DNA of 55,470 nucleotides from Octopus sinensis (lineage: Eukaryota), in assembly GCF_006345805.1 (NCBI RefSeq), contig NW_021834164.1, forward strand, positions 1 through 55,470, read 5' to 3'. The position numbers and the translations under genes are program-made. Each line of letters opens with the position of its first letter. Position 1 is the stretch's first letter. Of this stretch, positions 18,431 through 44,263 are shown one piece after another. The notes under the pieces are model-generated. The model had not been told where the DNA came from. It saw nothing but the letters and a program-made list of their open reading frames with translations, and did no database searches.

Positions 18431-18450
18431 TAATATAACACATTCACCGG

Positions 18451-18536
<86 letters not shown>

Positions 18537-19270: not shown

Positions 19271-19527
19271 ACAGAGTTTACAGATTTGTGGCGAACTGGC
19301 AGAATCGTTAGCACGCCGGGCGAAATGCTTTGCGGTATTTCGTTTGTCGTTACGTTGTGAGTTCGGGGACGTAAACATACCAGCATCGGTTGTCAAGCGA
19401 TGTTGGGGGGACAAACACAGACACACACATATACATATACATATACGACAGGCTTCTTTCAGTTTCCGTCTGGTCTGGGGATCGAAACCGCGAGTCCGCT
19501 GCCCTAACCACTGGGCCATTGCGTCTC

Positions 19528-21490: not shown

Positions 21491-22036
21491 AACGCCACAC
21501 GATGCAACTTAGCGGTTCAGCAAAAGACACCGATAGAATGAGTACTAGGCTTACAAAGAATAAGTCCTGGGGTAGATTTGCTCGACTAAAGGTGGTGCAC
21601 CAGCATGGCCGCAGTCAAACGACTGAAACAAGTGAGAGATTAAAAGAGCAAATAGTGCCAAAAGTGTATATTCTTTAATTAAGGGAGATAACTAAAAAAT
21701 AACATCTTAGTCATATAAAACCGACGTGACAGTTTCGAATTGAAACGGGCTCGTTTTTCGCTTGCGAAGGGGACACGAGCATTGGCGCACCAACAGACAC
21801 ACATACGCATGCAAGCTTTCTGCTGATACCTTTAACAAATAAACATTGACTAGCTTATATTTTACATTTAATTACACGCCACAACTATATAAAGTAATAA
21901 CAATATCTAGTACAAACCTTTGGACTTGATCAGGTGATTATTTTGTTTTAGATAGTATATATGCGTGTGTGGGTATATACACCTATATATGTATGTATTT
22001 ATGTATGTATGTACGTATGTATGTATATATATATAT

Positions 22037-24170
22037 ATGGAATTGTATCTTTGTGGTACCAGTGACGGTGGCACACAAGAAAACCACCCGAACGTGGCCG
22101 TAGCCAGTACCGCATCGACTGGCCTCCGTGCTGTGGGCACAACAAACACCATCCGATCGTGGCCGTTCGCCAGCCTCATCTGGCACCTGTGTCGGTGGCA
22201 CATAAAAACACCATCCGAAGACCCGGCGACGTAGTCAGTCCACCTGTGCATACCTTCCTTCTTATGACACTTGTGAAGACCTGTTGAGGCAAGTGTGTGA
22301 CACTTGTGAAGACCTGTTGAGGCAGAGGCAAGTGTGTGACACTTGTGAAGACCTGTTGAGGCAGAGGCAAGTGTGTGACACTTGTGAAGACCTGTTGAGG
22401 CAAGTGAAAATCAAACCAAATCAAAATAGATGAACATCAATGGAATTTGTATCTTTGTGGTACCAGTATCGGTGGCACACAAGAAAACCATCCGAACGTG
22501 GCTGTAGCCAGTACCGCATCGACTGGCCTCCGTGCTGTGGGCACATAACAAACGCCATCCGATCGTGGCCGTTCGCCAGCCTCATCTGGCACCTGTCCGA
22601 AGACCCGGCAAGACTAGTCAGGCCATAGCCCGTGGCCCCTTCCTGGGATGTAGTCAGTCCACCTGTGCATACCTTCCATCTTATGACACTTGTGAAGTCC
22701 TGTTGAGGCAAGTGCTAATCTAATCAAATCAAATGACACTTGTGAAGACCTGTTGAGGCAAGTGATAATCATAATCATAATCAAATCAAATCAAAACAAA
22801 TCAAAATAGATGAACATCAATGGAATTTGTATCTTTGTGGTACCAATGCCGGTGGCACACAAGAAAACCATCCGAACGTGGTGGTAGCCAGTACCACATC
22901 GACTGACCTCCGTGCTGTGGGCACGTAACAAACACCATCCGATCGTGGCCGTTCGCCAGCCTCATCTGGCACCTGTGTCGGTGGCACATAAAAACACCAT
23001 CCAAAGACCCGGCAAGACTAGTCAGGCCATAACCCGTGGCCCCTACCTGGGACGTAGTCAGTCCACCTGTGCATACCTTCCTTCTTATGACACTTGTGAA
23101 GACCTGTTGAGGCAAGTGAAAATCAAACCAAATCAAAATAGATGAACATCAATGGAATTTGTATCTTTATGGTACCAGTGCCGGTGGCACACAAGAAAAC
23201 CATCCGAACGTGGCTGTAGCCAGTACCGCATCGACTGGCCTCCGTGCTGTGGGCACATAACAAACGCCATCCGATCGTGGCCGTTCGCCAGCCTCATCTG
23301 GCACCTGTCCGAAGACCCGGCAAGACTAGTCAGGCCATAGCCCGTGGCCCCTTCCTGGGATGTAGTCAGTCCACCTGTGCATACCTTCCATCTTATGACA
23401 CTTGTGAAGTCCTGTTGAGGCAAGTGCTAATCTAATCAAATCAAATGACACTTGTGAAGACCTGTTGAGGCAAGTGATAATCATAATCATAATCAAATCA
23501 AATCAAAACAAATCAAAATAGATGAACATCAATGGAATTTGTATCTTTGTGGTACCAATGCCGGTGGCACACAAGAAAACCATCCGAACGTGGTGGTAGC
23601 CAGTACCACATCGACTGACCTCCGTGCTGTGGGCACGTAACAAACACCATCCGATCGTGGCCGTTCGCCAGCCTCATCTGGCACCTGTGTTGGTGGCACA
23701 TAAAAACACCATCCAAAGACCCGGCAAGACTAGTCAGGCCATAACCCGTGGCCCCTACCTGGGACGTAGTCAGTCCACCTGTGCATACCTTCCTTCTTAT
23801 GACACTTGTGAAGACCTGTTGAGGCAAGTGAAAATCAAACCAAATCAAAATAGATGAACATCAATGGAATTTGTATCTTTATGGTACCAGTGCCGGTGGC
23901 ACACAAGAAAACCATCCGAACGTGGCCGTAGCCAGTACCGCATCGACTGGCCTCCGTGCTGTGGGCACGTAACAAACACCATCCGATCGTGGCCGTTCGC
24001 CAGCCTCATCTGGCACTTGTGTCGGTGGCACATAAAAACACCATCCGAGCGTGGCCGTCTGCCAGCCTCGTCTGGCACCTGTGTCGGTGGCACATAAAAA
24101 ACACCATTTGAGCGTGGCCGTTCGCCAGCCTCGCCTGGCACCTGTGTCGGTGGCACATAAAATCACCCAC
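22037..24170 (+). repeat. Higher-order tandem repeat (380+332 = 712-bp dimer) derived from an RTE-LINE 3' region
   Basis: ATGGAATT(T)GTATCTTT monomer starts at 22037, 22440, 22820, 23152, 23532, 23864; duplicated ORF-track pairs are offset by exactly 712. Confidence 0.92.
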
Positions 24171-24335
24171 TACACTCTCGGAGTGGTTGGCGTTAGGAAG
24201 GGCATCCAGCTGTAGAAACACTGCCAGATATGACTGGCCTGGTGCAGCCTTCGGGCTCCCCAGACTCCAGTTGAACCGTCCAACCCATGCTAGCATGGAA
24301 AGCGGACGTTAAATGATGATGATGATGATGATGAT
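24170..24335 (+). mobile_element. RTE LINE 3' terminus with (GAT)n tail
   Basis: CACTACACTCTCGGAGTGGTTGGCGTTAGGAAGGGCATCCAGC...CCCATGCTAGCATGGAAAGCGGACGTTAAATGATGATG; reverse copy at ~49047-49595. Confidence 0.85.
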
Positions 24336-24499
24336 ATATATATATATATATATATATAAAGATAGATAGATATAGATATATATAATGATAGATATAGACA
24401 TATATAAAGGTATATATATATATATATTATATATAAAGATATATATATATATATATATAATATAATATATATATACATATATAATATATATATATAAAG

Positions 24500-24531
<32 letters not shown>

Positions 24532-24794
24532 TATATATAAAGATATATATACATATATATATATATATAAAGATATATATACATATACATATATATATAT
24601 AAAGATATATATACATATACATATATATATACATATACATATACATATATATAAAGATATATATACATATACATATATATATATATATATATAGATATAT
24701 ATATATATATATATATACATACATATATATATACATACATATATATATACATACATACATATATATATACATACATATATATATACATACATAC

Positions 24795-24827
<33 letters not shown>

Positions 24828-24919
24828 CATTATATATATATATATATATATACATATATATTATATATATATATATATTACATATATATATATATATGTA
24901 TATACATATATGGTTGTAT

Positions 24920-25960: not shown

Positions 25961-27583
25961 ATTTTCCTTTTGATGCTTTTAAAATATGAAAATTTCTTTG
26001 ACAGTCATTGACCAAAACAAAACGAAGATCTTCGTCAGTAAAGGAATTTGTCTGGGGTCATCAAAGTTTGAAGTTACTCTTTTTAGTTTTATAAAGTCAC
26101 TAAAAGTCTTACGTTTTCTCAATTTATAGAAAACTAACACTTTTATAAATGAGTTTATTGCTACACATTAAATGTTAAACTAAATTTTCTCCAGCTGGTC
26201 TATATAAACAGTAACCTACAGCTTTGGACAGCTTTATTATTTTGTTGTGTATTTACATTGCATATAATGTGTGAATAGCATTTCTCCCCAGTTATCCAAG
26301 AAAAAAATCAGAAACTTATGTTATCAATTTATTTGGAATAATTTTGTACAAAGTTTGATGCAAAATAATTTTGTTGTGTCTGGGGAGAGTCATTCTCTTT
26401 TAGTGCCTTATTATTTAACACACTCAACGGTAAAATTTCGTTTTGCTTTAATAGTAATTATCAATTTCTGAATAAAGTTTATTTTTATCTAATTTAAATA
26501 TCTTGATTATTTAATTTAAAAACAATCAGGTTTGTTCACTTCTATCACAAAAGAATCCAATAAAAAGTGGAGAATACTTATGAGTCTTCCTTTCCAATTC
26601 CACAAAAGTCTGCTCGGTAGAGCTTCCTGTCACATCCTATAATGTACATAAAGGTCTCATGTGTTTTACTTATTTAATCTTGGTCTCTGCTGTAAGAACT
26701 TGAAATCTAATTTCAAATTAAAATAACATGTAATAACAGTGGAGTAATATGAAGGTAAATATTGTAGGGAAGAATTGTACTCTTCCTTTATCTGAAGTTA
26801 CTTAAAAAGAGGGAGACACTGTGGCTTTTCCACAATCACATGCAATTAAAACAACAAATGTTGTGTCATTATTTTATTATCTCACAATTTTTCAGCACAG
26901 CTATTGTTTAATTTTATTTTTTGATTTATTTTCATATGTATAATAGTGAAGTTTTATTTTTACTGACGAAAATTGCAGTCATTAGTAAATAACGAAGGTC
27001 ATAAAGTAAGAATATAAAATAAAAATTGTATATTGCACTCAAAACCCCGTGAATTTTATTCAACCACCGCCACTTTGGAGAGGCCTGTCATAAACCACAA
27101 CAGGACAAGGTGAGATATATCCTTAGATACATCATGTATTATATAGAAATACTATCTCTATAGGATATATAAAGGGAAAAGACATCAATATATATACCAG
27201 GCATTCTACTCTCAGCTAAAAATGAAGGTAGATAACTATCAATATAGGAGAAGATATTAAAGCTGTCTATATAACAATATAGGGATGGGATTAGATATAC
27301 AACAGCAACAACAATAAATGAACATTTCAAAGTTTGTCTTTATTTTAAAAGTGAATTTTTAACAAAGGAGCAAAACCAGTGATGGGATCACAATGTGATT
27401 GATATACCTGCTAGAATTAGTAGCTAAATTCACACGATATCACTGTACAGAAGGGCATATTGGACGAGGTGGTTGTGGGTTCTCTTTGGAAATAGGCATG
27501 ATGGTCCTGGCTGGAATGCGTTTGATCAAAAGACTCTGTTTGGTCAAGGTTAATCTGAAGCTAAACAACAGTTACATGGAAAT

Positions 27584-27783
27584 TCACTTTGCGTCTAATG
27601 ACAGACATTCCATCGCAGTGAAACATTCAGCTTCTTCAAGAGCTGCACTTAATGTTGCGTGTGTCCGTGTTTCTGGGTCGCAATTTCTGAACCATTCATG
27701 AAGCATCAGGTAGCCTTGTTTTACAGTGTCAATAGACTCATCATCAATTTTCAGTTCAGTTGTATCAACTCCTGAAAAGATCG
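27584..27783 (-). CDS. Terminal exon, Death domain C-terminal part
   Basis: TCTTTTGCAG| acceptor, phase 1; (A)IFSGVDTTELKIDDESIDTVKQGYLMLHEWFRNCDPETRTHATLSAALEEAECFTAMECLSLDAK-stop. Death-fold pattern ML..W....T...L..AL. Confidence 0.82.
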
Positions 27784-28295
27784 CTGCAAAAGACACAACA
27801 ATAAGAAATAAATGCAACAACATTGACAATAATATAAAACGCTGTGTACAATCTAAATTGGAATTATCAGCTTCCAACACAATAACCCAATAAATAATGG
27901 CTGCAAGAAGAACCAAACTCAAAGTCTTCTGTTTGAAGAAAGATGCTTTGTTTTAGATGTTAACTTTGGTACTTGTCCTTCATTGCAATAACCTAACAGT
28001 GAACCTAAAGAAAATGTAAAACAAATTCACTCATCTGTTTACCCTTAAACAATATATTTTAGTTCCCTCTTCCAAAAGATAATATTAAACGCCATTTCTA
28101 TTTTCTAGTTTATCCATTATTACTAACCATGCTAACCTTAGTGGATATTTTATGAAATATCAGGAATATCGTAAATAAAATTGTCATACAGGTAACCTAT
28201 CAATGGGAAATGAGGAATGTAACTTGTTCTCATTCATTCTGACAAATAAAATTGATGAGGTGAAAGTAAAATATATAGAAATCAAATATACTCAC

Positions 28296-28367
28296 CCACT
28301 TGCCACCAATCACGTCCTAACCTCTTAGCCACTCTCAGAAGATCCCTCTCCTTCAGAACTGGACTCT
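28296..28367 (-). CDS. Death domain N-terminal exon
   Basis: TATTTATTTCAG| ... |GTGAGT, 72 nt, phase 1-1; ESPVLKERDLLRVAKRLGRDWWQV matches the L..VA..LG.DW start of Death domains and joins in frame to 27783. Confidence 0.85.
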
Positions 28368-29249
28368 CTGAAATAAATATTTCCAAGTTATATAATTGAT
28401 TGTAAAACTTATTTATCTCTATAAATATTCTGTAGTTTATTGTTGTGGGACATTGTTATCAACAGTGGTTGGCTGGTGACCACTAGGGTTTTGCTCAGTA
28501 TTTTTATACTTTCCATTGTGGGACCATGTAATAGCTCAATATTTAGGCCCGCAACAAAATAGACTAACTTTCCAAAACTTTGTTTCTTTTTAACAGAGAC
28601 ATCCTACATAATCTAAAAATGTTGCAATTATTTCATTTAATTATCATTTCATGAGACTGTTTCTTCTCATAGTTCTCTCTCTCCTTTGATATATCTCTAC
28701 CAAATCTATGACATGCGACTGTCCTCTGAACTCTAGACTTCACTAACCACCATTCTCCTCATCTTCTGCTAAAGTCCAATATCATCCAATGTGGTCTCCA
28801 AAGATCTCGTCACAAATGCATGACACACCACTTCAAGTAAAATAAACATAATACCAGTTCTCTTTGCTGTTGGAAAATCTTGAATTTTATCATCCTACAT
28901 CCCAGATCACCTGGTCATTATCTGGTGCAGGGAATATTTTAAGACTCCTTAATAAAGGTGAGCAATGATCAGTTCTCCACAGATGAAACAAAAAGTGATA
29001 TCAGGTGTCCTAAAACACTGTACACTTGTACAAAATCCCATTAACTACATACAACTGGACATCTACACATTATTGCAGTGAAGACATCTGAAATGGTACA
29101 AAAGGACTGATACTCAAAAATATATAAGAAAGACGGGAATACAAAGTGCGAGCTCCAAATCTTTTATTTTCCAGAATGTTTGGCATATTTATTTCTTTTA
29201 ACCCATCTTCGTTCTGTGACGTGATCTCAATGCCTTTACTATTATTGCA

Positions 29250-30200
29250 AAATTAGGTAGTTTACCATCGTCGTAATAGTTTTTCAAGTTTCCCTTTAAA
29301 CTTCATCAGGGTTTCTCCTGCTATTTTGACCTTCACTTGTTTCTGCTGACCTTTCACAAATGACGGGCTTCATTACCCATTTGCATTGAAGCACATTCTT
29401 CACCAAGTTCCTCAGTCTACCCAGTTAATCCAGAACTATTTGCATATCCTTTTATTTGTTGTTACTATTGTTATGTAATCCATTAATGTCTTCTGGAGTG
29501 TTTTCCTTTGAGCCATTTCTTATCAATCTGTTGATTTAAGTAACATCTCCATAACAATCACAAACCAAATGACTGATTTTGTAGAAACTACAGCAATTCC
29601 CGTTTCAAAATGATACCAGTCTGCCGTGAAAGTTTTCCTCATGAACTGCATATTGAAATTGTTATAGCAGCTCCTCATCAGATCCTTAATCTTTTCTCAT
29701 ATATAAAACAGGTCCACTGCTTCCATCAACAATTTGTTTGCTAGAGAACCATAAACCAGATCAAATCACACAACATTCAATCCCTTTTATTCTTCTTTCC
29801 GTCTTGTATCACATCCTAGATTTAAGACACATGTTCCACACAGCCAGGAATGCCAGAGGATTCCAGTCTTCAAGATACTTTTAGTCCCATATTCATTATT
29901 CTGTAGATTTACAGTTGATCTCTTTGTGAATACAACCTTGTAAATCTTGTCATTTATATTCAAGGTTGAAATTAGTCTGAACTAATCAATCGGTATTTGA
30001 TTGCTGGTTTCAATGGACATTTCAAACTGTCTATGAATGGGAATCATTGCTTTTGCTTTGGATCTCCTGCATATATCCATCCAGTTCATCTTTATTGTAT
30101 TTTAGCTTTGTTCTCAGTATCTGCAAACAGAATTTCCTTGTAGAAGTTAAAGAGGAACGTTTAATTTTGTTGACAACATGATCATTTTTCTAGTGCTTTT
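29250..30200 (-). mobile_element. Degenerate reverse transcriptase fragment, R2/Hero-like
   Basis: FRLISTLNINDKIYKVVFTKR, GIPGCVEH and KIKDLMRSCYNNFNMQF..WYHFETGIA..SVIWFVIVMEMLL across shifted frames. Confidence 0.65.
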
Positions 30201-30885
30201 GGAGCAAAATTGTGCCCAAGGACTTTTTAAAGCGGTTGATGTTAGGAAAGGCACATCACCATAGAAAAGCCGGAATGTGTTCCTCATCCAATCAAGGCGG
30301 ACAGTATTTGTTAATAAGAACTGACATGGATAGGAATCATCCATCCAATCGATCGGAGCATAGACATCAGATGATAAAGGATGAGGGTCATCAGTGTCTA
30401 TCTTGGAGAGAGAGAGAGAGGACGGTTGTCTCAACATCAAACCTAATACTTTTACATGGATAAAGACAATGTTTAGGGGATGTAATGATAAATTTATTAT
30501 CAGTGAAAACAAAAAGGCAGGGTGTTCACATAAGGAACACATTTCATTGTAAATCTGTCACATTATGAGAGATATTTGCCTAAATAGCAACAACAGCAAT
30601 AACCTATCAGTAAACTTAGTAACTACATATTTTAGTCCTCCATTTCAAAATACAGTATTAATTCTATTGTCTTCTAAATTATCCATTTTCCGAACCATGC
30701 CAACCCTGTTGACTATTTTGTGATATTCCATTGTTATCAAAATATCTAATAGAATTATTATACAGCTAATATTTCAGATGTAAATTAGGAATGGATCTTG
30801 TCCTCAGTCATTCTGATAAACTACAAATGCTCAGGTGAAGGTTAAATTTATAGAAATCCATGAGGTACTGTTATTTGCTACTCAC

Positions 30886-30933
30886 CAACTAGCTGTGATG
30901 TTGTTAAGGCATCCTTCACAGAAGTTGGAGTCT
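30886..30933 (-). pseudogene. Microexon paralog with inactivated acceptor
   Basis: Homologous context, but the acceptor reads TTTCAA| instead of TTTCAG|; donor GTGAGT intact; would encode xTPTSVKDALTTSQLV. Confidence 0.6.
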
Positions 30934-32965
30934 TTGAAATGAATATTTTCAAGTTTTACGTTTTATAGTATAATTTCATTATAGTTATTGATAATCAACA
31001 CTTTATTATTGTGGGAAGGGCATACAGCTGTAAAAACTAGTTCGTAGGGATGTGGTTGTGTACCCATGTAAAAGTTATGTTTACTTTGAGGGTAAGAAGG
31101 CGTAAAATATCAGATGAGGGTACAAGATAATGCTATGAAACTTTCAGACAGACAAGTTTAAGAGAGTTAATGAATGATAGCTGATTAATTATCATGTTAA
31201 TGCAGCATATAAACACTAACTATCAATATAGATTGTATAAAATCTGTGTGAAGAACATGTGACATTTGTTACAATTAATATGGTTGTGTCTCAGCACAGT
31301 TGATATTATGGTAGTTCCATGAGAAACCATAGAAAAATGTAACCATTTCCAGTACCGAATACTAATGATGAATTCTTTTCTTGGTCAGATAACAATGACC
31401 AGGTTGCATGATCTAATTTCAACAGAACAATCAAGTCGGAAGTAAAACCAAAATGTGGAAGACTGAAAACAGTGACTCTCTTACAATTGAAATCATCTCA
31501 AAGCCAACAATTGTCAGTATAACGATGTCTATATGGACAGTAAATGTTATTCAAACATCGTAACAAGCGATAATTATATATATATATAGTTAGAAAAGAG
31601 TTGTGAGTTCAAGTCACACTGGAATCTCATACGTTCATTCCTTTCCATGTATTGCATATGCTAGCATCAATGTCTTGTTCAAATGTGAACATATGTTCTC
31701 TGTTCAATATGAATGTTATCAAAATCACTGAACCGGTTTTCTCAATCAATATTATTATACTGAGCTAATATGTTATACCAGACAGGAAACTACTGTAACA
31801 ATCGAAGACAAAGAATTATGATGAGTTACTGGAAGACAGCATCATCGTCATCATCATCATCAACATTCAAAGTTTGTTTTCCATGCTGGAATGGGTTGGA
31901 AATCTTGACAGGATCTGACAAGCCAGACAACTGCACCAGGCCCCAGATGGTTTCTTTTGCATGGTTTTCTACTGTAGGATGCTCTTATTGATGCCAACCA
32001 CCTCACAGAGTGTACGTGGCCCCTTTTTATAAAGCGCAAGTACTGGCATATTTAGCCAAAAGACATGTAAGACAAAGACCCCACAGCCGAGAGAGGGGGT
32101 ATTGCAAATTTCTCTCCTCGCATCCTGATTCTTTTGTCACCAGAGTCCCTTCTCACCTCCTGAAAATGTCATCAGCTTCAGTGAACCAAAACATCATAGA
32201 ATAGTGAGGACCGTCTAATTATATAGAATGTAACACAACTTCATTACTATTTGTGCTATAATTAAATGCTCCCAGAACACACTAGGAAGTGGTTGGTGGA
32301 AACTAGGAAAGATGACACCACAAGTTTGAAAGGAATGTTTCATATTGTTGAGAAATTGATGATCATTTCTAATGCTTGTACGACAATAAAATATACCCAG
32401 GACCCTTTATAAAGTGGTTGGGGTTAGAAAGGGTCTACCACCTTAGAAAAGCTGCAATGTTTAAGTGAGATGTTTTCCTCAACAAATGACGGTTGGCAGT
32501 AATTTCAGATACAACTGACTTGGACAGTGATGACCCACCTAGTGTATGGGAGCATGGAGAGCAGATGAGAAAGGATGAGGATGATATCATTTATTGTATT
32601 GAAACTATTAACCAGCATCTTTCTTGAAAAGACGGAGAGAAAGAGCATGAGTGAGAGAGAGAGAATGAATGAGTACAATGAGATGACAAACAGGGCGAAT
32701 ATTCTCCTTAACGGGAGAGAACGGTTTCAGGGTTTATATTTAATTTTTGTATCTTTCTTTCTGCGAGTGAATGAGTAACAGATGTTTGCATAAAGTACAT
32801 TTATTGGATATTCATGTTGTTGTAGAAGAACAGAATTTCTTTATAGCTAAGCATTCAAATGAAATGTAGCAGTGGAACCTGTTCTCGGTCATTCTATTGA
32901 CCAAAATAGCTCAGTAAAAGCTAAAATTTATAGAAATCAATTATGTAATGTCATTCTATACTCAC

Positions 32966-33016
32966 CACGTGGCTCTTCCACTGTCTGGACCTCTTTGTCT
33001 TCAAATATTGGCCTTG
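32966..33016 (-). CDS. 51-nt linker microexon
   Basis: TATTTATTTCAG| ... |GTGAGT, phase 1-1; (T)RPIFEDKEVQTVEEPR. Confidence 0.72.
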
Positions 33017-33119
33017 CTGAAATAAATATTTCCAAGATTATACTTTATAGTAAAATTTCTTTAATGAACATCGATATTTTATAATTGTGAAATATTCTTA
33101 TAACCAATAGTCAAGATTA

Positions 33120-33700
33120 ACTGTCCCAAATGCCCCCACTCTGTAGGTAATGAAGGGCTTCTCCCTAAGAGTGGAAAGCAGATTGTATGAAACCTGTGTA
33201 CAGACAGATGTACAACACAATAATGAAAGATAGGCTGTGAAGATTGAAGACATGCAAAGGGTTGGAGATAAATGAAGCCAGCATGCTCCACTGGATGTAC
33301 AACATCAGTGTTCAGGTAAGTCACAGTGGAAATGTCTTAAGAGAAAATCTGGGTATAAGAGTCATCCGATGTAGAGTTCAACAGAGAGATCTTTCATAGT
33401 ATGGTTATGTGATGCATATGGATGGGGTGATCAGCATAAAGAGATGCGGATCTCTAAATGTGGAGAGAAGCTGTGGAAGAGGAAGACTGAGGAAGACATG
33501 GGACAAAGTGGTAAGAAATGATGTTCAGATGCTGAGCTTCACACGGGAAGATAACAAAAACGACTGAGACAATCAGCAATTTTCTGTGCTTGAAAAGACC
33601 CAACTGGCTAAGTAACATCGAGGCCATCATGGCATGTCCTTTCTGTGCATACCTTCCACCCTGAACACAATCTGTCCCCTAAAAAACATCCCCAGCAACC
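33120..33700 (+). mobile_element. Degenerate RTE LINE 3' fragment
   Basis: NEASMLHWMYNISV, GRGRLRKTWDKVVRND motifs with stops. Confidence 0.8.
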
Positions 33701-34841
33701 TTGAAACCATACACTCTTTCTCCACCATGATCTCTAACAAGGTGTAAAATGTTAAGTGAGGGTACAGGATGTTCCTATGACAAAATAAGTTTACATTTCA
33801 GACATACAAATGTAAGAGAGTTAATGAATTATAGCTTATTAATTATCATGATAATTGGGTATATATGTGATACAGTAGTACTGTGCTTGACGGTGCAATA
33901 CCAGATATCAATATAGATTGTATATAATCTGAGTACAGAACGTATAACCTTCATTACTATGAATATGATTGTGTCTCAGCAAACGAAGAAAGATATAACC
34001 AAGTCCACTGCCAAATACTAATGAATAATTTATTTCCTGGTCAAATAACAATGACTATCATTCATTAAATAATTTGAATGCAACAATCAAGACCAAAGGG
34101 TGAAACACTCAGAAAACTGTGCCTCTTTTAGCATTAATATCATCTAAAATCTAACAAGTGTGAGAAAAGAATGACTATATGGATAGTAAAGTTGTTCAAA
34201 CAATGTAATAAGTGTATATTATATATAGTTACAAACAGGATTTGTGAGATCAAGTCACACAGGGAACTCATATTTAATTCCTATCTTATATTTTATGTCA
34301 ACACCAATATTTTGTTTAAATGAAAACAGATGTTCACCGTTCAATACTAAATTTAATATTTAATCAACATTAATGATCATTATACTTATAATCTTAGAGA
34401 TTTGATTTTTAATTTCTTTAATTTATAACAAAGTTGTTCTGACCTGAGACATTCAGGGTACGTACCTAAACAACCTATCATGACAGACATCTGGCTACAT
34501 AACAACAACAACAACAATAACCTATCAGAAAACTTAGGAAAGACCTTAGTAGTAAAAGAAACAAAAACTTTCTCGTTAACTCACCTGTTTACAAATAAAC
34601 AACAAAATATTTTATTTCTCTGTCCTAAAGGACATCATTAACTCTATTGTGTCTGCTTATTTATCCATTTTACAAACCACGTTAACATCGATTAAAGGAA
34701 ATTTCAGTGGAATATTTAATAGAATCATTTTAGACCTAATCTTACAAATAGAAATTAAGAACGGAACTTGTTCTCGATCAGCCTGTCAAGCAAAATCACT
34801 CAGGCGAAGATAAATGTTATAGAAATCTATAAAGTACTGTT

Positions 34842-35152
34842 GTGGAGGCACAACGGCTCAGTGGTTAGGGCAGTGGACTCGCGGTTGTAGGATCGCGTTT
34901 CGATTCCCAGACCGGACGTTGTGGGTGTTTATTGAGTGAAAACTCCTAAAGTTCCACGAGGATCCGGCCGGGGGGTTGTAGCGATCCCTGCTGTTCACTT
35001 TCTCCACAACATTCTCTCACTCTTTCTTCTGTTGGCCTGCTCGCTTAGCCAGCGAGGTGGCATCATTTGAAGGCTAAAATAATGCGAAGTGCAGTGTAGC
35101 CAGCGATGTGTAGCAACATCTGATAGCCTGGTCGGTCACAGTAATAACGGTG
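34842..35152 (+). mobile_element. tRNA-derived SINE (same head as 8551, different body)
   Basis: GGCTCAGTGGTTAGGGCAGTGGACTCGCGG..TTTCGATTCCCAGACCGG; flanking direct repeat ATAA(A/G)GTACTGTT at ~34829 and ~35153. Confidence 0.7.
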
Positions 35153-35206
35153 ATAAGGTACTGTTAATTTATAGAAATCTATAAGGTACTTTTAACTTAT
35201 ACTCAC

Positions 35207-35257
35207 TAACTGCCCCTGCCATCATCTTGGCTTCTTTCTCTTTAAAATTTGGACTCC
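35207..35257 (-). CDS. 51-nt linker microexon
   Basis: CATATCTCAG| ... |GTGAGT, phase 1-1; (G)SPNFKEKEAKMMAGAV. Confidence 0.7.
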
Positions 35258-36576
35258 CTGAGATATGTGTTTTCAAGTTTTATACTTTATAGAAAAATCT
35301 TAATAATCTATATTATTGTGAGCCATTCCTATCATAAATGAACAACCGGTGACCATTATGGTTTTGGAAGACAGATTCAACGGTGTTACCATTTAATAGG
35401 TCAATATTTAGGTGCATAACAAAATAACCTTCTAACCTTCTTAACTCTTAAATCTCTAATCTTAAATCTCCGCTGCCTATTAAGACATCCTACATAATCT
35501 AACAATGACCAACTTCGATGACCAGCTTGGTTGACATTAGAATCAAGCAGAAGATAGGAAAATGTTGGTTTGGGAAGTCTAGAGGTGAGAGAACGACGCC
35601 ATGTCATAGATCTGGCACAGATATAAGAAACGAAAGAGAAAACGGAGAGATTAACAGTGATATCAATGGAAAATTAAATGAGAAGTTGTGTTCGAATCTG
35701 ATATTTCAAAAGCTGAATCGAAGTTCCAGCAGCAGAATTGGGTATTATCACCCTTACAAGACAGAACAAAATAGCCATTCGATAAAAGTAATTTAATGAT
35801 CAATATTCCAATACAGAGTTAATATTCAATTTTGTTTTATTTACTTTCTAGAGTATATATTCAAAGCTGAGACCTTCATTGTATATAACGCAAGAGATGA
35901 TATCTCATATCAAGCAATTATTTGAGATCTTTTATAAGATGATAAACCATTATGCATTTCCGGAGAACAACTTTATAAATATCCATGTCATTTTTTACAA
36001 GTTGCCAGTATTTACACCTACACAGAACAACTGATTTAACCGTCAGACTTTCTAATGTTGGTTCTCAAACTCTCAGCTGAGATTTTATGATTAAATATCT
36101 TACTTCAGCAAAGCTTGAAATGATGTTCTTGGGAATATCTTTGTCTTTAATCATCATCTTCCCTAGATACTGATAAATCATTAATCAACTTTGATGACTC
36201 ACAATCAATTGTTAGAAATTGGTGTTTACTGATATAAAAACGGATGTACTGATATTTCAGTGAGTTACTAGTAATATTGCTGTATCATTCATTAGTCTTA
36301 TGTTGCAGCATGATTCATTAGTCTTGTGCTACAGACAGGACCCTCTTGAAATGTGAAAAGTCTTCTATTTGGATAAAGACAATGTTTTGTGGATGTAGTG
36401 AGAGATACACTATCACAGAGAAATGACACTTGGAACATCTTTCAACATTAATCTGCCAGTTTATGGCAGATCTGGGTCTACACGACAATTCTGAAGCACA
36501 TTAAATACCATATATACATATTATATATCATAAAGTCAATGAGACAAACAGACAGATTATCAAATAGTTTTCTTAC

Positions 36577-36719
36577 CAAATTCTCTCACACCACTTATTG
36601 GCTGTTGACAAGTGGGGCATGATTCACACTTAATTCTGATATAACAATCACGACATAGGGCTATATGTTCACAGTGCTTGAATTCGGAAGAGGCATACAT
36701 CACTTGACAATATGTACAT
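36577..36719 (-). CDS. RING-HC (C3HC4, MIB/IAP-type) finger exon
   Basis: TTTTGTTCCACAG| ... |GTAAGA, phase 2-1; CTYCQVMYASSEFKHCEHIALCRDCYIRIKCESCPTCQQPISGVREF gives C-x2-C-x11-C-x-H-x3-C-x2-C-x8-C-x2-C. Confidence 0.85.
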
Positions 36720-37097
36720 CTGTGGAACAAAATACAAACACATCCCGACAATAATTTTCATTTATAATAAGGATTACATTGTGTACCTGTTCAGAATAGA
36801 GAATATTACGAGACATTACAATGATGAGTAAGACTACATTAGAAAGAGATTTCTTTTAACAATTACATTCAAACAGATTTGTGTGTGTATGAACAGAGCA
36901 CACATGCAAACGCGTATATATTTAATTATACACATATTGATAAATATATGATTGACTCTGACACATGTCTAAAATCGCAAGAACACAATGGGATACATAT
37001 ATTGAAGAAATATACTTCAATTCTAGCATAGACTCCATTTCTTCTGAATAAACACATGAATGAACACAAGTTCATTTGTGTAATTACACTTTCTTAA

Positions 37098-38168
37098 CCC
37101 TTTCGTTACCAAACCGCCAAAGCCGCCCGAAAAAATTTTGGTTATGGACCAAACCACCCAAACCGCCCGAATTTACCTATTCATATTTAAATGAGAATAT
37201 CAGAGAATCTCTTTAGTACATTCGTGAAAACACGTATTATACTTCGTAAACAGTTCAACTACAGTTTTGTACAATAATCGAAGTGTAATTTTAATCCCTG
37301 AATTTGAGAGATTTTTTTCCGAAATTTGTTCCTTTGTGTTTTCAAAATTTGTAATTCTGACAAAAAATGGATACGAATTTCATTATATCAAGCAGCGAGT
37401 CAGAATTTGAAGGATTTTCTACTGAAGACCTTCATAAATCTAACTCTATGACTGAAAAAAAAAAAAGCACATGGTATTGATAATGAATCTGATGTTTCAT
37501 TTTCCGAAAGTGAAAACAGTGAATTCGAGAGCTCCGACAGCGATAAAGAAAACGATTGGCACCTGAATGGAGTGAAAATTTAAAAAACTGTTTCTTCGAT
37601 GATTTTTCTGAAGAAACTGGACCAAGCCACACAGACTTTCCCAGAGGAGTAAAGCCTTAGACTATTTCTTTCTACTTTTTCGAATGAGCCTATTTGAAAT
37701 CATTACGGCGAAAACGAACCGTTACGCTAAACGTAACAAGCGAAAGAAACGATAGTTTGTGGTTTCCCATAACCTTAAATGAAATTAAGACTATTTTGCC
37801 GTAAATATTATTAGTGTATCAGAAAGTTACCCAGAATAACAAATTCTATCGTAAAATTTTGTTGTATACCCAATTGAATATTAGCAATAAAACCATTTTC
37901 TATAGCGATGTTTGAACAAAATTTTAATAATTTTATTATTGTTGAATTTACTGTATCTACCTGCAATTAGAGTCACTTTGTGACAAAAATTATAGTATAG
38001 AATTGGTTGAGAATATTTCATTAAATTATCTTCCAAAAATCGATTAATATATTGATAATAAAAAAGTTATAGTGTTTAATGAAACCAGACTAAATTTATG
38101 ATTACGTTAGAAATAATTGAAACACATAATAAGGGGTGTATGTTGGTCAGAAATATAGTAAGAAAGGG
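37098..38168 (+). mobile_element. Internally deleted piggyBac-like DNA transposon
   Basis: TTAA at 37094-37097 and 38169-38172; ends CCCTTTCGTTAC / GTAAGAAAGGG; degenerate PGBD4-like N-terminus (acidic stretch, ALDYFLLLF..LFEIITAKTNRYAK, WFPITLNEIK). Confidence 0.85.
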
Positions 38169-39609
38169 TTAAACGTGTATAAACAAATACTTTATTGCAT
38201 CTAATATATTTAACAAGTGTTCTATACTTTGATATTTGATTTCAAATTTTATAGATAGGCAGAGAGAACACAATTGCCATGGCTTTCTTTATAGATACAC
38301 TATGTAACAAAACAAGTCATAGTTCTAAAATAGAACCATGCCTTGAAAATCATCTTTAATACATAAAAGTGTGTGTGTTTGTGTATGTGTACATAATTTG
38401 AGAACACATTTCAAATAGATGGGTTGAATGCAGTAACCGTTATATCTGTATCTGGCATTAATGTAGCAATAACCTCAAGATGATCCCAGACCAATAGAAG
38501 GTACATAATGGTCCTATCATTGAAGGACTGGAGGAAATGGTCCAACTACCGTATTGGTCATTTCAGTGCCTGACTCACGTATCTTCTCCTACGATTTTTG
38601 CCAACCAAAATCTGACCATGCACGGGGAAATTTCGGACATTTGTTCTAAAGGATATTAAACGCAAGAATCTTTACAGAAAATGAAGGATCATAACAGAAT
38701 TCCCAGCATACAAACTTGCCCCTAGTGAGAGCTGAATCCAGGCCCATTGAGAAAGTCACTGAAGCTGACAGACATGATGCAATCTTCATTCGTATGGCTG
38801 AAGCTTTCATTGATCTACAACTATTTTCTAACAACTTGTTCACTTTAACTGTGTTCCTCTAAAATATGTCCCCTACCTCCGTTGATTGGATCAAAACTCA
38901 GACTAGTTAGATTAAACCTCCTTCTCAGGTATGTGCATACGGTTTAGCCTCTGATAATGCTAAATATGAAAATAAAATTGCATATTGGTTTCATCCTTAT
39001 ATATCACCTGAGGATATGTATTGTAGCTCCTTTGTATCAAGACTCTACACAACGTGGAAAAGTGATGCGATTTGGTCTGAGGATATTGAACAATGTGCAA
39101 CAATGGGAAAACCACAGGAAGCTAAACAAGAACAATACATCCTCTTCTATGAATCATGATAGGCTTAAATCGAGATACAAATTATTGTTTATAAATGTCC
39201 ATAGTTCATGCAATAAAGTTCGTCTTTGTTTTAACTGTCACTTGAAAAGTATCAGTTCTGATCTCACAACAGTTAAACCTTGAGGCATTCCTTACACTGC
39301 AATGGTATTTTCAGCATGGCAAGCTACATTTTGCTTCACAAATATCATTTAATTACCATGGTGCGGTGTGGTAGTCTCTATTTACTCAAGGTTTTCAGAA
39401 ATTCCTTGTGAAGTTTCAAAGCAGTCGTAACAGGAGGTATTTTTTGCGACCACCCACCAAGCTACCATGTTTTTGACATTGTTGGAGCTGCATCTATGAA
39501 AGAAAAGCCACCTATGATTTCTTACTGGTTAGTTCCTTTTACCAGAGTTTGGCTTCGAAAACTTTCACGGATCCCGAAGGGAAATTGATTTCCTTGATCT
39601 TGTGTTGGA

Positions 39610-40380
39610 TTCAAACTGACCCCAATTAATCAACTCTTCCATAAGACGTAACAACACTTTGGATATGTTATTTACTCATGAAATTGTCATCAGCCTCACT
39701 ACCAAGGTCTATTTAGGTGACTCTAATCATGCGCCAATCATTTCAATCTATATCTAAAGGATAGAAAGAAGACACCAAAACCCCCAAACTTTTTGCTTGT
39801 ACTGGAACAATGCGGACTGGAACTCCTATTGCAGAGTCTTTTAGTGCCATCATTGGTTTCAAGTTTACAATTCTGGAGATGTCAATGCTAACCGTCAGCA
39901 CATCCTTAATTGATTGAGGGTCACATACTAAGCATCAATAACCATTAAACTCGTTAAAAAGCCCCATGGGAAACTATAGCAGCCCACTTCGCCACGAAAG
40001 ATCGAAGAGATGCTGAATGCGAATACTGATTACATTGAAAAGGGGATGCAAAAGAGCATCAATCCATATGAAGCACGTGACTAAAAAGGGCAGTACTTAA
40101 ATTTTAGACAACAAATGGTAACCAATGGGAATAGAGAGTCATTTTGGAAGTATGTTCAAAACATGGGGCCTCATACTCCAGTCAGCCCTTTTTGAAATCC
40201 CAACAACTCGGATTAATAAAGATTCCAAAGAATATAGTTGGGGGCTTGTTGTAGAATTCTGTGCTGGCAATTTCACTGTCGAACATCCGAATGTACCATC
40301 TTCACTGTTGCAGAGACCAAATCCCATCATATCTGCTGAATTTAATCTTGCAATTCTGTAATACCAACAGAAGCATATCT
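39610..40380 (+). mobile_element. Ancient CR1/L2-like LINE endonuclease-linker remnant
   Basis: LTQLINSSIRRNNTLDMLFT..SNHAPI and NRESFWKYVQ motifs, heavily degraded. Confidence 0.5.
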
Positions 40381-41297
40381 ACACCTCCGCTCCCTCTCTC
40401 GCTCTGATGGCCTTATTTATCTGCTCTTCTTACTGCACCAAATTTTCTACTCTTTCAAGTTGGTTTTAATTATTTTGTTGCCGCAGAATATGTGGTCTGA
40501 TCAATAGGAATCAGGACTGTAGTCATAGTGACAAAGCTAAAGCATGCAGAGTAAATCCGCTTGGCACAGATTGACCTGTGAACACTGTTGTGCATGTGCA
40601 CTAAGTTTAAACGTTCTAGCTTACTTCTACTGCCCACGGCAGTGCTTGGAAGGAAGGTGAGTAGCGTGTGATCGTTGCATTGACCACTCCATTTCCCCTT
40701 TCAATCCTTTCTGTCGAAGAGCGTAGGTTCTAAACATCAAAGACTTCCCCATTTTTTCCCGAGCGTCAAACTAATACACCTTCTTGTTGTGCCCTCACCT
40801 GTCTTCGTCTTTTGTTTACTGTAAATTTATGTGTGTGTGTGTGTTTACTTAAGGTTGGAATGTAGAACTTTTTCTTGTGAAGAGTATCGACTAGTAATTT
40901 TTAACTAAGATCTTAATACATAAGCATTACGAAAGATGTTTTATGAATACATTTGTGTACACTACACACCGAGACAAAGGCCAGGGGACTGCTAGTATAT
41001 ATTATACACACACATACATGCATACATACGCATAGCAGACTTAATAACATAGGCTAAAAGAAAAATAACAGAGGGAGGAAGCGGAGGCATTGAAATAAAC
41101 ACTGGGTTTACAATTTGAAGTTCGGAAGTGTGGAAGTTGTAAAGATAATTTATGGACAGGTCAGAAAGAAAGCTAAAACAGCAAAAGGAGTGGGAGGGAG
41201 TTACAGTTACAGACACTAAATACATGAAACTTGACTTTATCACTTTTACACACACATATTTAATTTATAGACACACATTAATTTATAGGGTACTACC

Positions 41298-41481
41298 TAA
41301 GAAGAGTGGTCCCGGTGCGCGCAATCGCGTACTAGCGCATCCGAGCTAGCTAGTCGATCTTTACTTTGTGTTTTTGTGTTTCATTTACTTTGCTAAGTAG
41401 TCGTTGTAGGATCGACTAGTCACGACTAGCTAGCGCGGATGCGCGAGTACGCGAGGGCGCGCACCAGGGCCACTCTTCTTA
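41298..41481. mobile_element. Short GC-rich MITE with ~60-bp imperfect TIRs
   Basis: TAAGAAGAGTGG..GGTGCGCGC..CGCGTACT..GCATCCG..GCTAGCTAGTCG mirrored at the right end; partial internal copy at ~45300-45370. Confidence 0.75.
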
Positions 41482-42259
41482 ATTAAATGGTATCCAGTTT
41501 CCACAGCGCAGAAATCTACCCTTGTTAAAACATATACACAAAACCCTACCATTTCAGGCTGACTTAACAGAGACCCTACTCTGTGTTACCTCCATCTCTG
41601 TCCCCCACAAAGCGGCCACACCCTTGTAAGTTTCATAACGAAAAACAAAATCATTAATTTCCTAATTGGATCACGCACATTTACGATAATTAATATCGTA
41701 TCATTAATTTATAGACACACAGACAGAGTTTAAGATGAAAGGATGTTCACTGAAGCGTTAAATGGCCCCAAATGAAATTAAAATGCCTTACCTCAGTTTA
41801 GTTTTGAACGGTAGCAACGTACCCGGGGTCCCAATTAATTTCAAATTTTCTGTTGCCGGAAGTAGATTAAAGGTCGGATAGGAGATGGCAAGTAAGTGGA
41901 GATAACTCTCGAAATATAGGCGGGGTTAGCGGTGTATTAAGTAGCTTGCGTACCATGCACATGGTTCCGGGTTCAGTCCCACTGGGTGGCACCTTGGGCG
42001 AGTGACTTCTACTGTAGCCTCGGGCGACCGAAGCCTTGTGAGTGGATCTCGTAGACGGAGACTGAAGGAAGCCCCGTCGTAAATATGTACATGTTTGGCC
42101 CGAGAAAACACTTGCCCAAGCTGCCACACAGTGGGACTGATCTCGGAACCAGGTGGTTGGTAAGCAAGCTACTTACCACTCAGCCACTCCTACGCCTACA
42201 GTCTCAAAGGCTGAAAATTATTTTAGAATTCTCTATCTTATATTTTCCTTACACGCCCC

Positions 42260-42375
<116 letters not shown>

Positions 42376-42605
42376 CTTTTAGCTGAAGGCAGAGATTTAT
42401 TGTATAGATCAAATTAAAGTATATGAAGAAGACAAGGTTTATATTTTTTATTTCAGGAAAAATTGATTCACAAATTTTGAATTTCCTTGAAATATAAAAA
42501 TCCCAAACGTTTTCTTTCTTTCAAATTTATCAACTATTTTTGAGATTCTTTAAAAACATATAAAGATTCTCTTCTTGTGAATATACTTCAAATATTTCTA
42601 GGTAA

Positions 42606-42733
42606 AGAAATAGCAGTCAAAGACAGTTTATTTCTATTTTATACAAATATAACTCCACATACATGTATATGGAGTTATATGTGGAGTTATATTTGTATAA
42701 AATAGAAATAAACGGTCTTTGACAGCTATTTCT
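42606..42733. repeat. Near-perfect hairpin, 56-bp arms
   Basis: 42606-42661 vs 42678-42733 are reverse complements with 2 mismatches. Confidence 0.9.
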
Positions 42734-43676: not shown

Positions 43677-43724
43677 ATGGCTTTTGGGAGTCCTACACCT
43701 GGAAATATTCTGTCTTTCGGTAAG
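43677..43724 (+). CDS. Candidate first coding exon of the ankyrin gene
   Basis: GAAATGG start context, MAFGSPTPGNILSFGK, strong donor AAG|GTAAAG; no homology evidence. Confidence 0.25.

Positions 43725-44204: not shown

Positions 44205-44263
<59 letters not shown>

What the first reader, a model, noticed from the sequence alone, without database searches (positions are those of the whole stretch)
27584..36719. Intact spliced RING-linker-Death domain coding unit on the minus strand, invisible to the ORF track
Joining 36719-36577, 35257-35207, 33016-32966, 28367-28296 and 27783-27584 gives one open frame: CTYC...CPTCQQPISGVREFGSPNFKEKEAKMMAGAVTRPIFEDKEVQTVEEPRESPVLKERDLLRVAKRLGRDWWQVAIFSG...LDAK. 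Canonical Mind bomb proteins end in RINGs and have no Death domain (established). A ubiquitin-ligase-type RING coupled to a Death fold, probably preceded by ankyrins, suggests a lineage-specific immune or apoptotic signalling adaptor-ligase (inference).
Basis: partly seen in the sequence, partly recalled or inferred. Interest (0 to 1): 0.72.

Follow-up and report, generated by a model that had tools for sequence, protein, structure and literature searches.

The report
Truncated octopus RING–Death-domain gene copy
The spliced RING-plus-Death-domain coding unit is real and its Death domain is genuine, but it is an already-annotated, 5'-truncated duplicate of an octopus-only family of ankyrin–RING–Death-domain proteins, so this copy is probably crippled rather than intact.

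Summary
The window is an entire unplaced Octopus sinensis scaffold (VCDQ01005432.1). NCBI already annotates the locus as LOC115230672 (isoforms X1–X3), using four of the five exons; exon 2 (35257–35207) appears in no annotated isoform.

The RING is of the IAP/MIB type (Pfam 27.1 bits against a cut-off of 27; family profile vs cIAP RINGs E 1.7e-7). The C-terminal 90 aa is a true Death domain. It fails Pfam alone (E 0.04), but the family profile hits the RIPK1 DD at 4.6e-11, and the 16 best Foldseek matches to the AlphaFold model are all DDs.

The unit belongs to a family of at least 77 protein clusters (ANK–RING–cassette linker–DD), found only in Octopus in the databases searched and mislabelled "MIB2-like".

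This copy is a partial duplicate. Close homology (90–95%) to two full-length paralogue loci stops at window 39105, and no ANK exon or in-frame start precedes the RING. The annotated proteins start after the first zinc-binding CxxC. dN/dS is about 1.

"Intact" and "preceded by ankyrins" do not hold, and the proposed function is untested.

The parts
36577..36719 (-). RING exon (C3HC4, IAP/MIB-type zf-C3HC4_3). It is entered in phase 1 through an AG acceptor. All eight zinc ligands are encoded (CTYC...C.H..C..C...CPTC).
   Evidence: sequence and splice sites. (Pfam PF13920, 27.1 bits, cut-off 27). (the 8 ligands are invariant in 19 family members). (family profile vs cIAP2/cIAP1 RING, E 1.7e-7).
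36698..36700 (-). ATG used as the start codon by all three NCBI isoforms (MYASSEF...). It lies after the first CxxC, so the annotated products lack zinc ligands C1 and C2.
   Evidence: P0001, P0002 and P0006 sequences. (CDS range 27584-36700). (no in-frame ATG upstream of CTYC).
35207..35257 (-). Candidate 51-nt phase-1 linker cassette (GSPNFKEKEAKMMAGAV). It is open, has AG/GT borders and is conserved in the P0030 locus, but no annotated isoform here or in the closest paralogues uses it.
   Evidence: (47% identity to the cassette used in P0007-type paralogues).
32966..33016 (-). 51-nt phase-1 linker cassette (A/T-RPIFEDKEVQTVEEPR), used in isoforms X1 and X3.
   Evidence: 100% identity to P0001, P0003 and P0109.
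28296..28367 (-). Death-domain exon 1 (ESPVLKERDLLRVAKRLGRDWWQV; helix 1 and the start of helix 2). It is 72 nt, phase-1 symmetric, and is skipped in isoform X3.
27584..27783 (-). Death-domain exon 2 (AIFSGVDTTELK...LSLDAK) plus the TAA stop codon.
26644..39105 (-). Segmental duplicate of the 3' half of an ANK-RING-DD gene. It is collinear at 90-95% DNA identity with the P0030 locus (L002 25500-35393) and the P0026 locus (L003 20892 onward). Close homology ends at 39105, downstream of where the paralogues carry their last ANK exon.
37097..38169 (.). Insertion of about 1.07 kb specific to the window, upstream of the RING exon. It is absent from both paralogue loci.
   Evidence: adjacent blocks abut in L002 at 26429-26432 and in L003 at 21824-21826.

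Best explanation
The locus is a 5'-truncated segmental duplicate of a gene from an Octopus-restricted family. The family layout is ankyrin repeats, then one IAP/MIB-type RING, then a variable string of 17- or 26-residue linker cassettes, then a C-terminal Death domain.

Shown:
- The exons, splice sites and open frame.
- The RING and Death-domain identities.
- The family, and its restriction to Octopus in the databases searched.
- The duplication breakpoint at 39105.
- The absence of ANK exons and of any start codon ahead of the RING.
- The linker exons are all phase-1 symmetric, so any combination of them stays in frame.

Inferred for the family: the Death domain docks the protein by DD-DD contacts into oligomeric death-domain signalling complexes. 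Its nearest solved relatives are the RIPK1, PIDD and ankyrin DDs. There the RING recruits an E2 and ubiquitinates complex members or proteins held by the ANK repeats, while the disordered, alternatively spliced linker sets the reach. This parallels what cIAP1/2 and vertebrate MIB2 do at RIPK1 complexes.

Inferred for this copy: translation from the annotated Met removes the first zinc-ligand pair, so the RING cannot fold. The product is at best a small DD-only protein. With dN/dS about 1, the copy is most likely a decaying, possibly still transcribed, duplicate rather than a working ligase.

The confidence given (0.6) is for the whole statement, including 'decaying rather than working'. The structural part alone (real exons, true RING and DD, Octopus-only family, 5' truncation) I hold at about 0.9.
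For: - Exons and frame.
- Existing annotation.
- RING.
- Death domain, by sequence: PIDD DD is the best PDB hit for the single sequence (E 0.013). The shallow profile gives 1.2e-3. The 19-member profile gives RIPK1 DD 4.6e-11, PIDD 1.3e-8 and ankyrin-3 DD 2.5e-8, plus Fas, FADD, CRADD and TRADD.
- Death domain, by exhaustive search: phmmer over 1.84 billion proteins gives 52 hits. The distant ones score 27.6-156 bits on Pfam Death and include NACHT-DD, CARD-DD and ZU5-DD proteins.
- Death domain, by structure: AF2 model with pLDDT 85.8 and pTM 0.78. The top 16 Foldseek PDB matches are all DDs, with TM-scores 0.56-0.79.
- Family census: 77 clusters, all Octopus, on at least 26 O. sinensis contigs (species also).
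- Truncation.
- Relaxed constraint: NG86 against the P0030 locus gives 14.5 nonsynonymous and 3.5 synonymous changes, omega 1.1.
- Linker: disordered in the full-unit model, pLDDT below 50 at residues 47-64, with the DD at 82-91.
- Analogy to MIB2 and RIPK1: PMC5912950.
Against: - NCBI models three isoforms here, which suggests the locus is transcribed and spliced. I could not see the RNA evidence or the 5' UTR exons, so an upstream non-homologous coding exon cannot be excluded.
- Every family-invariant DD residue and all eight RING ligands are still encoded, and there is no frameshift or premature stop. That is more than expected of an old pseudogene.
- The dN/dS counts are tiny (18 substitutions). 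Omega about 1 could equally reflect diversifying selection, which is common in immune gene families.
- The scaffold is a small unplaced piece of a draft assembly, so a misjoin between 39 and 48 kb could mimic truncation.
- No experiment links any family member to ubiquitination, DD complexes, immunity or apoptosis.
Confidence: 0.6

Rival explanations
1. The copy is a functional DD-only regulator. Translated from the annotated Met, with its RING disabled, it competes with full-length ANK-RING-DD paralogues or other DD proteins for death-domain assemblies. That would resemble the way CARD-only, PYD-only or short MyD88 forms damp signalling in vertebrates.
For: - All annotated isoforms keep the frame, and X1 and X2 keep the whole DD.
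- The DD part has the lower dN/dS (0.64).
- All family-invariant DD residues are retained.
- Other short RING-DD or DD-only products are annotated in the family: P0008, P0012, P0019, P0111 and P0114.
Against: - Isoform X3 skips DD helix 1.
- The dN/dS for the DD rests on 10 substitutions and is not distinguishable from 1.
- No expression or interaction data exist.
- Many short family products sit on fragmentary scaffolds and may be annotation artefacts.
Confidence: 0.25
2. The unit is an intact RING-linker-DD (or ANK-RING-DD) gene. Its start and upstream exons would be missed either because they are non-homologous or because the draft scaffold is misassembled.
For: - The acceptor at 36719 is canonical, and its phase matches the paralogues' ANK-to-RING junction (GC|A = Ala, as in P0004 and P0030).
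- The first CxxC is perfectly preserved although it lies upstream of the annotated Met.
- The scaffold is unplaced and rich in repeats.
Against: - There is no ANK-like exon on the minus strand from 36720 to 48700, even at tblastn E<=50.
- Two independent paralogue loci lose homology at the same window position, 39105.
- The annotated CDS starts at the internal Met.
- The plus-strand ANK exons belong to a different subfamily and pair with a different RING type in full-length proteins.
Confidence: 0.12
3. The C-terminal region is not a Death domain but an unrelated small helical bundle, so the 'Death' label is a chance weak match.
For: The single-sequence Pfam Death score is below threshold (14.5 against 22.6 bits, E 0.04). 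None of the closest paralogues carries a precomputed Death hit. Foldseek E-values are modest (0.05-0.7).
Against: - Profile E-values are 4.6e-11 to 1e-3 against more than 30 solved DDs and nothing else in that region.
- Transitive phmmer links reach proteins that pass Pfam's Death threshold.
- A sister subfamily has precomputed PF00531.
- The 16 best structural matches are all DDs, with probability 0.77-1.0.
Confidence: 0.02
4. The gene is a true Mind bomb (MIB2) orthologue, as the database names of its relatives say.
For: NCBI names many paralogues 'E3 ubiquitin-protein ligase MIB2-like' or 'MIB1-like'. ANK repeats followed by a zf-C3HC4_3 RING resemble the C-terminal half of MIB.
Against: There is no MIB/HERC2, ZZ or REP domain in any member, including the longest ones (for P0031; precomputed Pfam lists). 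There is one RING rather than two or three. The RING is followed by a DD instead of ending the protein. The family is confined to Octopus.
Confidence: 0.02

Closest known systems
cIAP1/cIAP2 (BIRC2/3) and molluscan BIR-DD-RING IAPs (oyster 'BIRC11', PMC8917759)
   Same: - A Death-fold domain sits in the same polypeptide as a zf-C3HC4_3 RING. The family RING profile's best solved matches are the cIAP2 and cIAP1 RINGs (E 1.7e-7).
- These proteins are ligases working in death-domain signalling complexes.
- The gene families are expanded in molluscs.
   Different: - The octopus family has no BIR or UBA domain.
- The Death-fold domain here is a DD proper, not a CARD.
- It lies C-terminal to the RING, whereas in IAPs the RING ends the protein.
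- The N-terminal module is ankyrin repeats.
Mind bomb 2 (MIB2)
   Same: ANK repeats are followed by the same RING subtype. Vertebrate MIB2 binds oligomeric RIPK1 and ubiquitinates it, including on lysines in its death domain (PMC5912950), so a functional link between this RING type and DD complexes has precedent.
   Different: The octopus proteins lack the MZM and REP substrate-binding regions. They have one RING rather than two, and they carry their own DD. They are 250-560 aa long, much shorter than a MIB2 carrying MZM, REP, ANK and two RINGs (length comparison from my own knowledge, not tested). The window copy lacks even the ANK repeats.
Death domains of RIPK1, PIDD1, CRADD and ankyrin-G
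   Same: These are the closest solved relatives of the C-terminal domain by profile (E 4.6e-11 to 8e-5) and by fold (TM 0.65-0.79). The shared core includes the LG.(D/N)W motif in helices 1-2 and the helix-4 Trp.
   Different: Sequence identity is 17-30%. The host proteins are kinases, adaptors or cytoskeletal linkers, not RING ligases.
ANKDD1-type and ankyrin-type ANK + DD proteins
   Same: Ankyrin repeats are combined with a C-terminal DD. This comparison rests on my own knowledge of those architectures. Only the ankyrin-1/2/3 DDs were seen as hits here.
   Different: Those proteins have no RING between the ANK repeats and the DD. Ankyrins also carry ZU5-UPA modules.

Membership tests
Death domain (DD subfamily of the Death-fold superfamily, Pfam PF00531) | The single sequence reaches Pfam's curated Death threshold. 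| tested here: not met
   14.5 bits against a cut-off of 22.6, E 0.04. The closest paralogues also lack a precomputed PF00531 hit. The sister subfamily in Octopus does have one.
Death domain (DD subfamily of the Death-fold superfamily, Pfam PF00531) | Significant profile-level sequence similarity to experimentally solved death domains. | tested here: met
   The A2 profile gives RIPK1 DD 4.6e-11, PIDD 1.3e-8, ankyrin-3 2.5e-8, and Fas, CRADD, FADD and TRADD at 1e-5 to 2e-3. Transitive phmmer hits pass Pfam Death at 27.6-156 bits.
Death domain (DD subfamily of the Death-fold superfamily, Pfam PF00531) | Compact antiparallel helical bundle with death-domain topology, closer to DDs than to CARD, PYD or DED. 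| tested here: met
   AF2 model with pLDDT 85.8. The 16 best PDB matches are all DDs (TM 0.56-0.79), and PYD and CARD folds appear only from rank 20 with probability at or below 0.5. Caveat: this is a predicted model from a shallow alignment, and DSSP merges helices 1 and 2.
Death domain (DD subfamily of the Death-fold superfamily, Pfam PF00531) | Homotypic DD-DD oligomerisation. | not testable with these tools
   Needs binding assays.
RING-HC, zf-C3HC4_3 (IAP/MIB/MUL1 type) | Eight zinc ligands, C-x2-C...C-x-H-x2-3-C-x2-C...C-x2-C, with correct spacing. | tested here: met
It is NOT met for the annotated proteins, which start after C1 and C2.
RING-HC, zf-C3HC4_3 (IAP/MIB/MUL1 type) | Reaches Pfam's curated threshold for PF13920. 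| tested here: met
   27.1 bits against 27.0, which is marginal. P0031 scores 37.9 bits. The family profile vs cIAP RINGs gives E 1.7e-7.
RING-HC, zf-C3HC4_3 (IAP/MIB/MUL1 type) | E2-dependent ubiquitin ligase activity. | not testable with these tools
   Needs an in vitro ubiquitination assay.
Mind bomb (MIB1/MIB2) | N-terminal MZM module (MIB/HERC2 - ZZ - MIB/HERC2) and REP region. | tested here: not met
   The Pfam scan of the 545-aa member P0031 finds only ANK and one RING. No MIB_HERC2 or ZZ accession appears in any precomputed list. The MIB2 domain scheme is from PMC5912950.
Mind bomb (MIB1/MIB2) | Ankyrin repeats upstream of the RING. | tested here: not met
   Met in the full-length paralogues, but no minus-strand ANK exon exists upstream of the RING exon in this window.
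Mind bomb (MIB1/MIB2) | Two or three RINGs forming the extreme C-terminus. | tested here: not met
   There is a single RING, followed by a linker and a DD.
IAP (BIR-containing) ligases | At least one BIR domain. | tested here: not met
   No BIR hit in the window peptide or in P0031. None appears in the precomputed lists.

The most novel reading that the evidence does not exclude
Octopuses have evolved their own rapidly diversifying family of death-domain-targeted E3 ligases (ANK-RING-DD). Isoform diversity would come from alternative splicing of in-frame 17- and 26-residue linker cassettes. Truncated copies such as this one would be retained as DD-only decoys that tune innate-immune or cell-death signalling. 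That would be a lineage-specific expansion of Death-fold adaptors in a motile cephalopod, a group that Kaur et al. 2021 (PMC8195603) noted as poor in TRADD-N adaptor expansions.
Probability: 0.25. Interest if true: 0.55.

Novelty: new variant of a known kind. Interest (0 to 1): 0.38.

Why it matters
**Annotation.** Dozens of octopus proteins named "MIB2-like", "26S proteasome subunit 10-like" or "uncharacterized" are really one ANK–RING–DD family. The subfamily that includes this locus has a Death domain that standard Pfam annotation misses.

**Biology.** A RING ligase with its own death domain would be a direct way to bring ubiquitination into death-domain signalling complexes. Vertebrates achieve this indirectly, through cIAPs and MIB2. 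An octopus-restricted expansion with variable linkers is the pattern expected of an evolving immune or cell-death gene family, in an animal group whose innate immunity is poorly known.

**This window.** The message is more modest. It holds a broken copy, useful mainly as a record of how the family spreads by partial segmental duplication.

Tried and rejected
- Single-sequence Pfam and PDB searches left the Death call ambiguous. A profile of eight near-identical paralogue DDs improved it only to E 1.2e-3. The diverse 19-sequence profile was what settled it.
- A hunt for upstream ANK or start exons on the minus strand, using tblastn with 15 paralogue N-termini at E<=50 and word size 2, found only plus-strand exons. 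Eight longer paralogues gave the same result.
- A search for the 26-residue cassette (APKFEDRCVQTEATCQELGAASQAIG) in the window's introns found nothing convincing.
I used the closest full-length relative's RING-to-end region instead.
- The locus look-up for P0003 failed.
- Four literature searches found no description of the family.
- Considered and rejected: a true MIB orthologue; an IAP; a non-DD helical bundle; the plus-strand ANK exons being the missing 5' part of this gene. Those exons are on the wrong strand, belong to a different subfamily, and show only 67-78% identity where the unit itself shows 90-95%.

Full report
**What the window is.** The 55,470-bp window is the whole of an unplaced scaffold of the Octopus sinensis assembly GCA_006345805.1 (VCDQ01005432.1). 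It is AT-rich and full of microsatellites and interspersed repeats.

**Checking the observation.** I extracted the five minus-strand segments. Each is preceded by AG and followed by GT, except the last, which ends in TAA.

This is not chance. The peptide matches annotated Octopus proteins at E 1.8e-87 downward, and tblastn with paralogues lands on the same exon borders.

NCBI already annotates the locus as LOC115230672, with three isoforms:
- X1 (148 aa) uses exons 1, 3, 4 and 5.
- X2 (131 aa) uses exons 1, 4 and 5.
- X3 (124 aa) uses exons 1, 3 and 5.

Exons 2, 3 and 4 are 51, 51 and 72 nt long and all are phase-1 symmetric, so any combination stays in frame.

Exon 2 (35257–35207) is in none of the three isoforms. 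It is also absent from the products of the closest paralogues, P0030 and P0103. A near-identical copy with intact splice sites does sit in the P0030 locus, and a distantly similar cassette (47% identity) is used in another subfamily. Exon 2 is therefore plausible but unsupported.

**The RING.** The exon encodes C-x2-C-x11-C-x-H-x3-C-x2-C-x8-C-x2-C.
- It scores 27.1 bits on Pfam zf-C3HC4_3, against a cut-off of 27.
- All eight ligands are invariant across 19 diverse family members.
- The family profile's best solved RING matches are cIAP2, cIAP1 (both E 1.7e-7) and CGRRF1 (2.7e-7), followed by XIAP, livin (BIRC7), MYLIP and MUL1.

It is an IAP/MIB-type RING.

**The Death domain.** On its own the C-terminal 90 residues fail Pfam Death (14.5 bits against 22.6, E 0.04). 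Their best solved match is the PIDD death domain, at only E 0.013. Three independent lines then settle the question.

1. An exhaustive phmmer search of 1.84 billion representative proteins found 52 relatives at E<=0.001. The distant ones are sea-star NACHT–DD, ZU5–DD and multi-DD proteins, a fish CARD–DD protein, and an octopus RIPK1-like DD protein. They score 27.6–156 bits on Pfam Death over the matched region.
2. A profile of 19 diverse family members hits the RIPK1 DD at 4.6e-11, PIDD at 1.3e-8, the ankyrin-3 DD at 2.5e-8, and the Fas, CRADD, FADD and TRADD DDs at 1e-5 to 2e-3. Nothing else matches in that region.
3. An AlphaFold2 model has pLDDT 85.8 and pTM 0.78, although the five models range from 56 to 86. 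Its 16 best PDB matches are all death domains: RIPK1, RAIDD, PIDD, FADD, ankyrin-G, p84, TNFR1 and Pelle/Tube. TM-scores are 0.56–0.79, and PYD and CARD folds rank lower.

**The family.** A profile search of 5.8 billion proteins returned 77 clusters at E<=1e-5. Every one is from O. sinensis, O. vulgaris or O. bimaculoides, and they lie on at least 26 different O. sinensis contigs (species also).

Full-length members are 250–560 aa. Their layout is 3 to about 9 ankyrin repeats, one RING, 0 to about 6 linker cassettes of 17 or 26 residues, and the C-terminal DD.

Their database names include "MIB2-like", "MIB1-like", "26S proteasome non-ATPase regulatory subunit 10-like", "ankyrin repeat protein RF_0381" and "uncharacterized".
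- One sister subfamily already carries precomputed Pfam Death + RING + ANK hits.
- UniProt auto-names one member "Death domain-containing protein".

So the architecture is visible in public databases. Four full-text literature searches found no description of it.

The proteins are not Mind bomb orthologues: they have no MZM or REP regions, a single RING, and a DD after the RING (MIB2 domain scheme from PMC5912950). The nearest precedents for a Death fold joined to this RING type are cIAP1/2 (CARD–RING) and oyster BIR–DD–RING IAPs (PMC8917759). Those have the opposite domain order and carry BIR domains.

**This copy is truncated.** The reading frame enters exon 1 in phase 1 with no start codon.
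- In the unspliced sequence there is no in-frame ATG between the last stop and CTYC.
- NCBI's CDS starts at an internal Met (36700), after the first CxxC. All annotated products therefore lack zinc ligands C1 and C2, which should prevent the RING from folding.
- No ANK-like exon exists on the minus strand upstream, even at tblastn E<=50.

DNA comparison with the chromosomal locus of the full-length paralogue P0030 (L002) shows the following.
- Window 39105→26644 is collinear with L002 25500→35393 at 90–95% identity.
- The window has a 1.07-kb insertion (38169–37097) and an extra segment that carries exon 3.
- Close homology stops at 39105, which is 1.3 kb downstream of L002's last ANK exon.

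A second paralogue locus (P0026, L003) loses homology at exactly the same window position and also lacks the insertion.

The only ANK exons in the window are on the plus strand: 48743–48886, 52337–52552 and 54197–54349.
- They match L002's ANK region at only 67–78% identity.
- They belong to a different subfamily.
- They run off the scaffold end.

They are the 5' half of a neighbouring paralogue lying head-to-head with this unit, not the missing part of this gene.

**Constraint.** Against the P0030 locus, the RING and DD exons differ by 14.5 nonsynonymous and 3.5 synonymous changes. Overall omega is 1.1, with the RING at 3.7 and the DD at 0.64. Exons are 94–97% identical and the flanking non-coding DNA 90–95%. 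The counts are too small to separate relaxed constraint from diversifying selection, but there is no clear purifying signal. No frameshift or premature stop has accumulated.

**How it most likely works.** The following is inference.

For the family, the DD would dock the protein into oligomeric DD assemblies. The RING would ubiquitinate members of those assemblies or proteins held by the ANK repeats. The linker is predicted to be disordered (pLDDT below 50) and would set the reach. This parallels cIAP1/2 and MIB2 acting on RIPK1 (PMC5912950).

For this copy, the absence of ANK repeats and of the first zinc site makes a working ligase unlikely. My estimates for this copy are:
- about 0.6 that it is a decaying, possibly transcribed, partial duplicate
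- about 0.25 that it survives as a DD-only decoy
- about 0.12 that an undetected upstream exon or a misassembly hides an intact gene
- the remainder is left unassigned.

**Verdict.**
- The domain interpretation is correct and non-trivial for the Death domain.
- The ankyrin prediction fails at this locus but holds for the family.
- The functional proposal is untested.

The gene itself is already known. The family is a lineage-specific new arrangement of well-known modules that has not been described in the literature I could search.

Noticed in passing
window 48743-48886, 52337-52552, 54197-54349 (+ strand): Three ankyrin-repeat exons make up the 5' half of a second 'MIB2-like' paralogue of the P0003/P0005/P0017 type. 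It lies head-to-head with the minus-strand unit and runs off the scaffold end, so its RING and DD exons are not in the window. The first exon looks somewhat degenerate, with a 4-residue gap relative to the paralogues.
   Followed up: partly
window 18817-19386 (- strand); gene call extends to about 17584-19260: An ORF with a Pif1 helicase 2B domain (34.6 bits). It is probably a fragment of a Helitron-type transposon helicase.
   Followed up: partly
window about 22200-24200: A GC-richer block (0.49 against about 0.35) made of a tandem repeat of roughly 712 bp. ORF pairs are duplicated at 22421/23133 and 22801/23513, and the block contains inner 39-bp and 63/125-bp arrays. An (AT)n tract follows at 24334-24911.
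   Followed up: partly
window 1074-1236, 17849-18361, 42925-43076, 46747-46904, 51485-51641 and others: Many copies of a SINE-like element of about 160 bp, 80-93% identical to L002 22796-22957. In the ORF list it shows up as '...ERQSRPRRNLNSERNGRRNT...' peptides.
   Followed up: no
P0057 / P0086 (Octopus bimaculoides XP_014788728, XP_052821851): An LRR-containing adhesion GPCR (GPS + 7tm_2) carries a C-terminal Death domain related to this family's DD (Pfam Death 27.6 bits). A DD directly on a GPCR tail is an unusual architecture.
   Followed up: partly
linker region of family members (e.g. P0039, P0063, P0093, P0107, P0037): The linker between RING and DD is built from tandemly duplicated 17-residue (xPKxExKxVQTVxExx) or 26-residue (APKFEDRCVQTEATCQELGAASQAIG) cassettes. 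There are 0 to about 6 copies per isoform or paralogue. In this window each cassette is a separate phase-1 symmetric exon.
   Followed up: partly
P0109 (O. sinensis, VCDQ01006078.1) and P0011/P0012-type paralogues: Some paralogues have substitutions at RING zinc-ligand positions. In P0109, C1 is replaced by S and C3 by W. In several others, the His ligand in C-x-H is replaced by Asp. The family may therefore contain RING-dead members besides this truncated copy.
   Followed up: no
window 34776-32221: The segment carrying cassette exon 3 has no close counterpart in the P0030 locus. It shows only 70-74% similarity to the exon-2 region there, which suggests the two 51-nt cassettes arose by local duplication.
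   Followed up: partly
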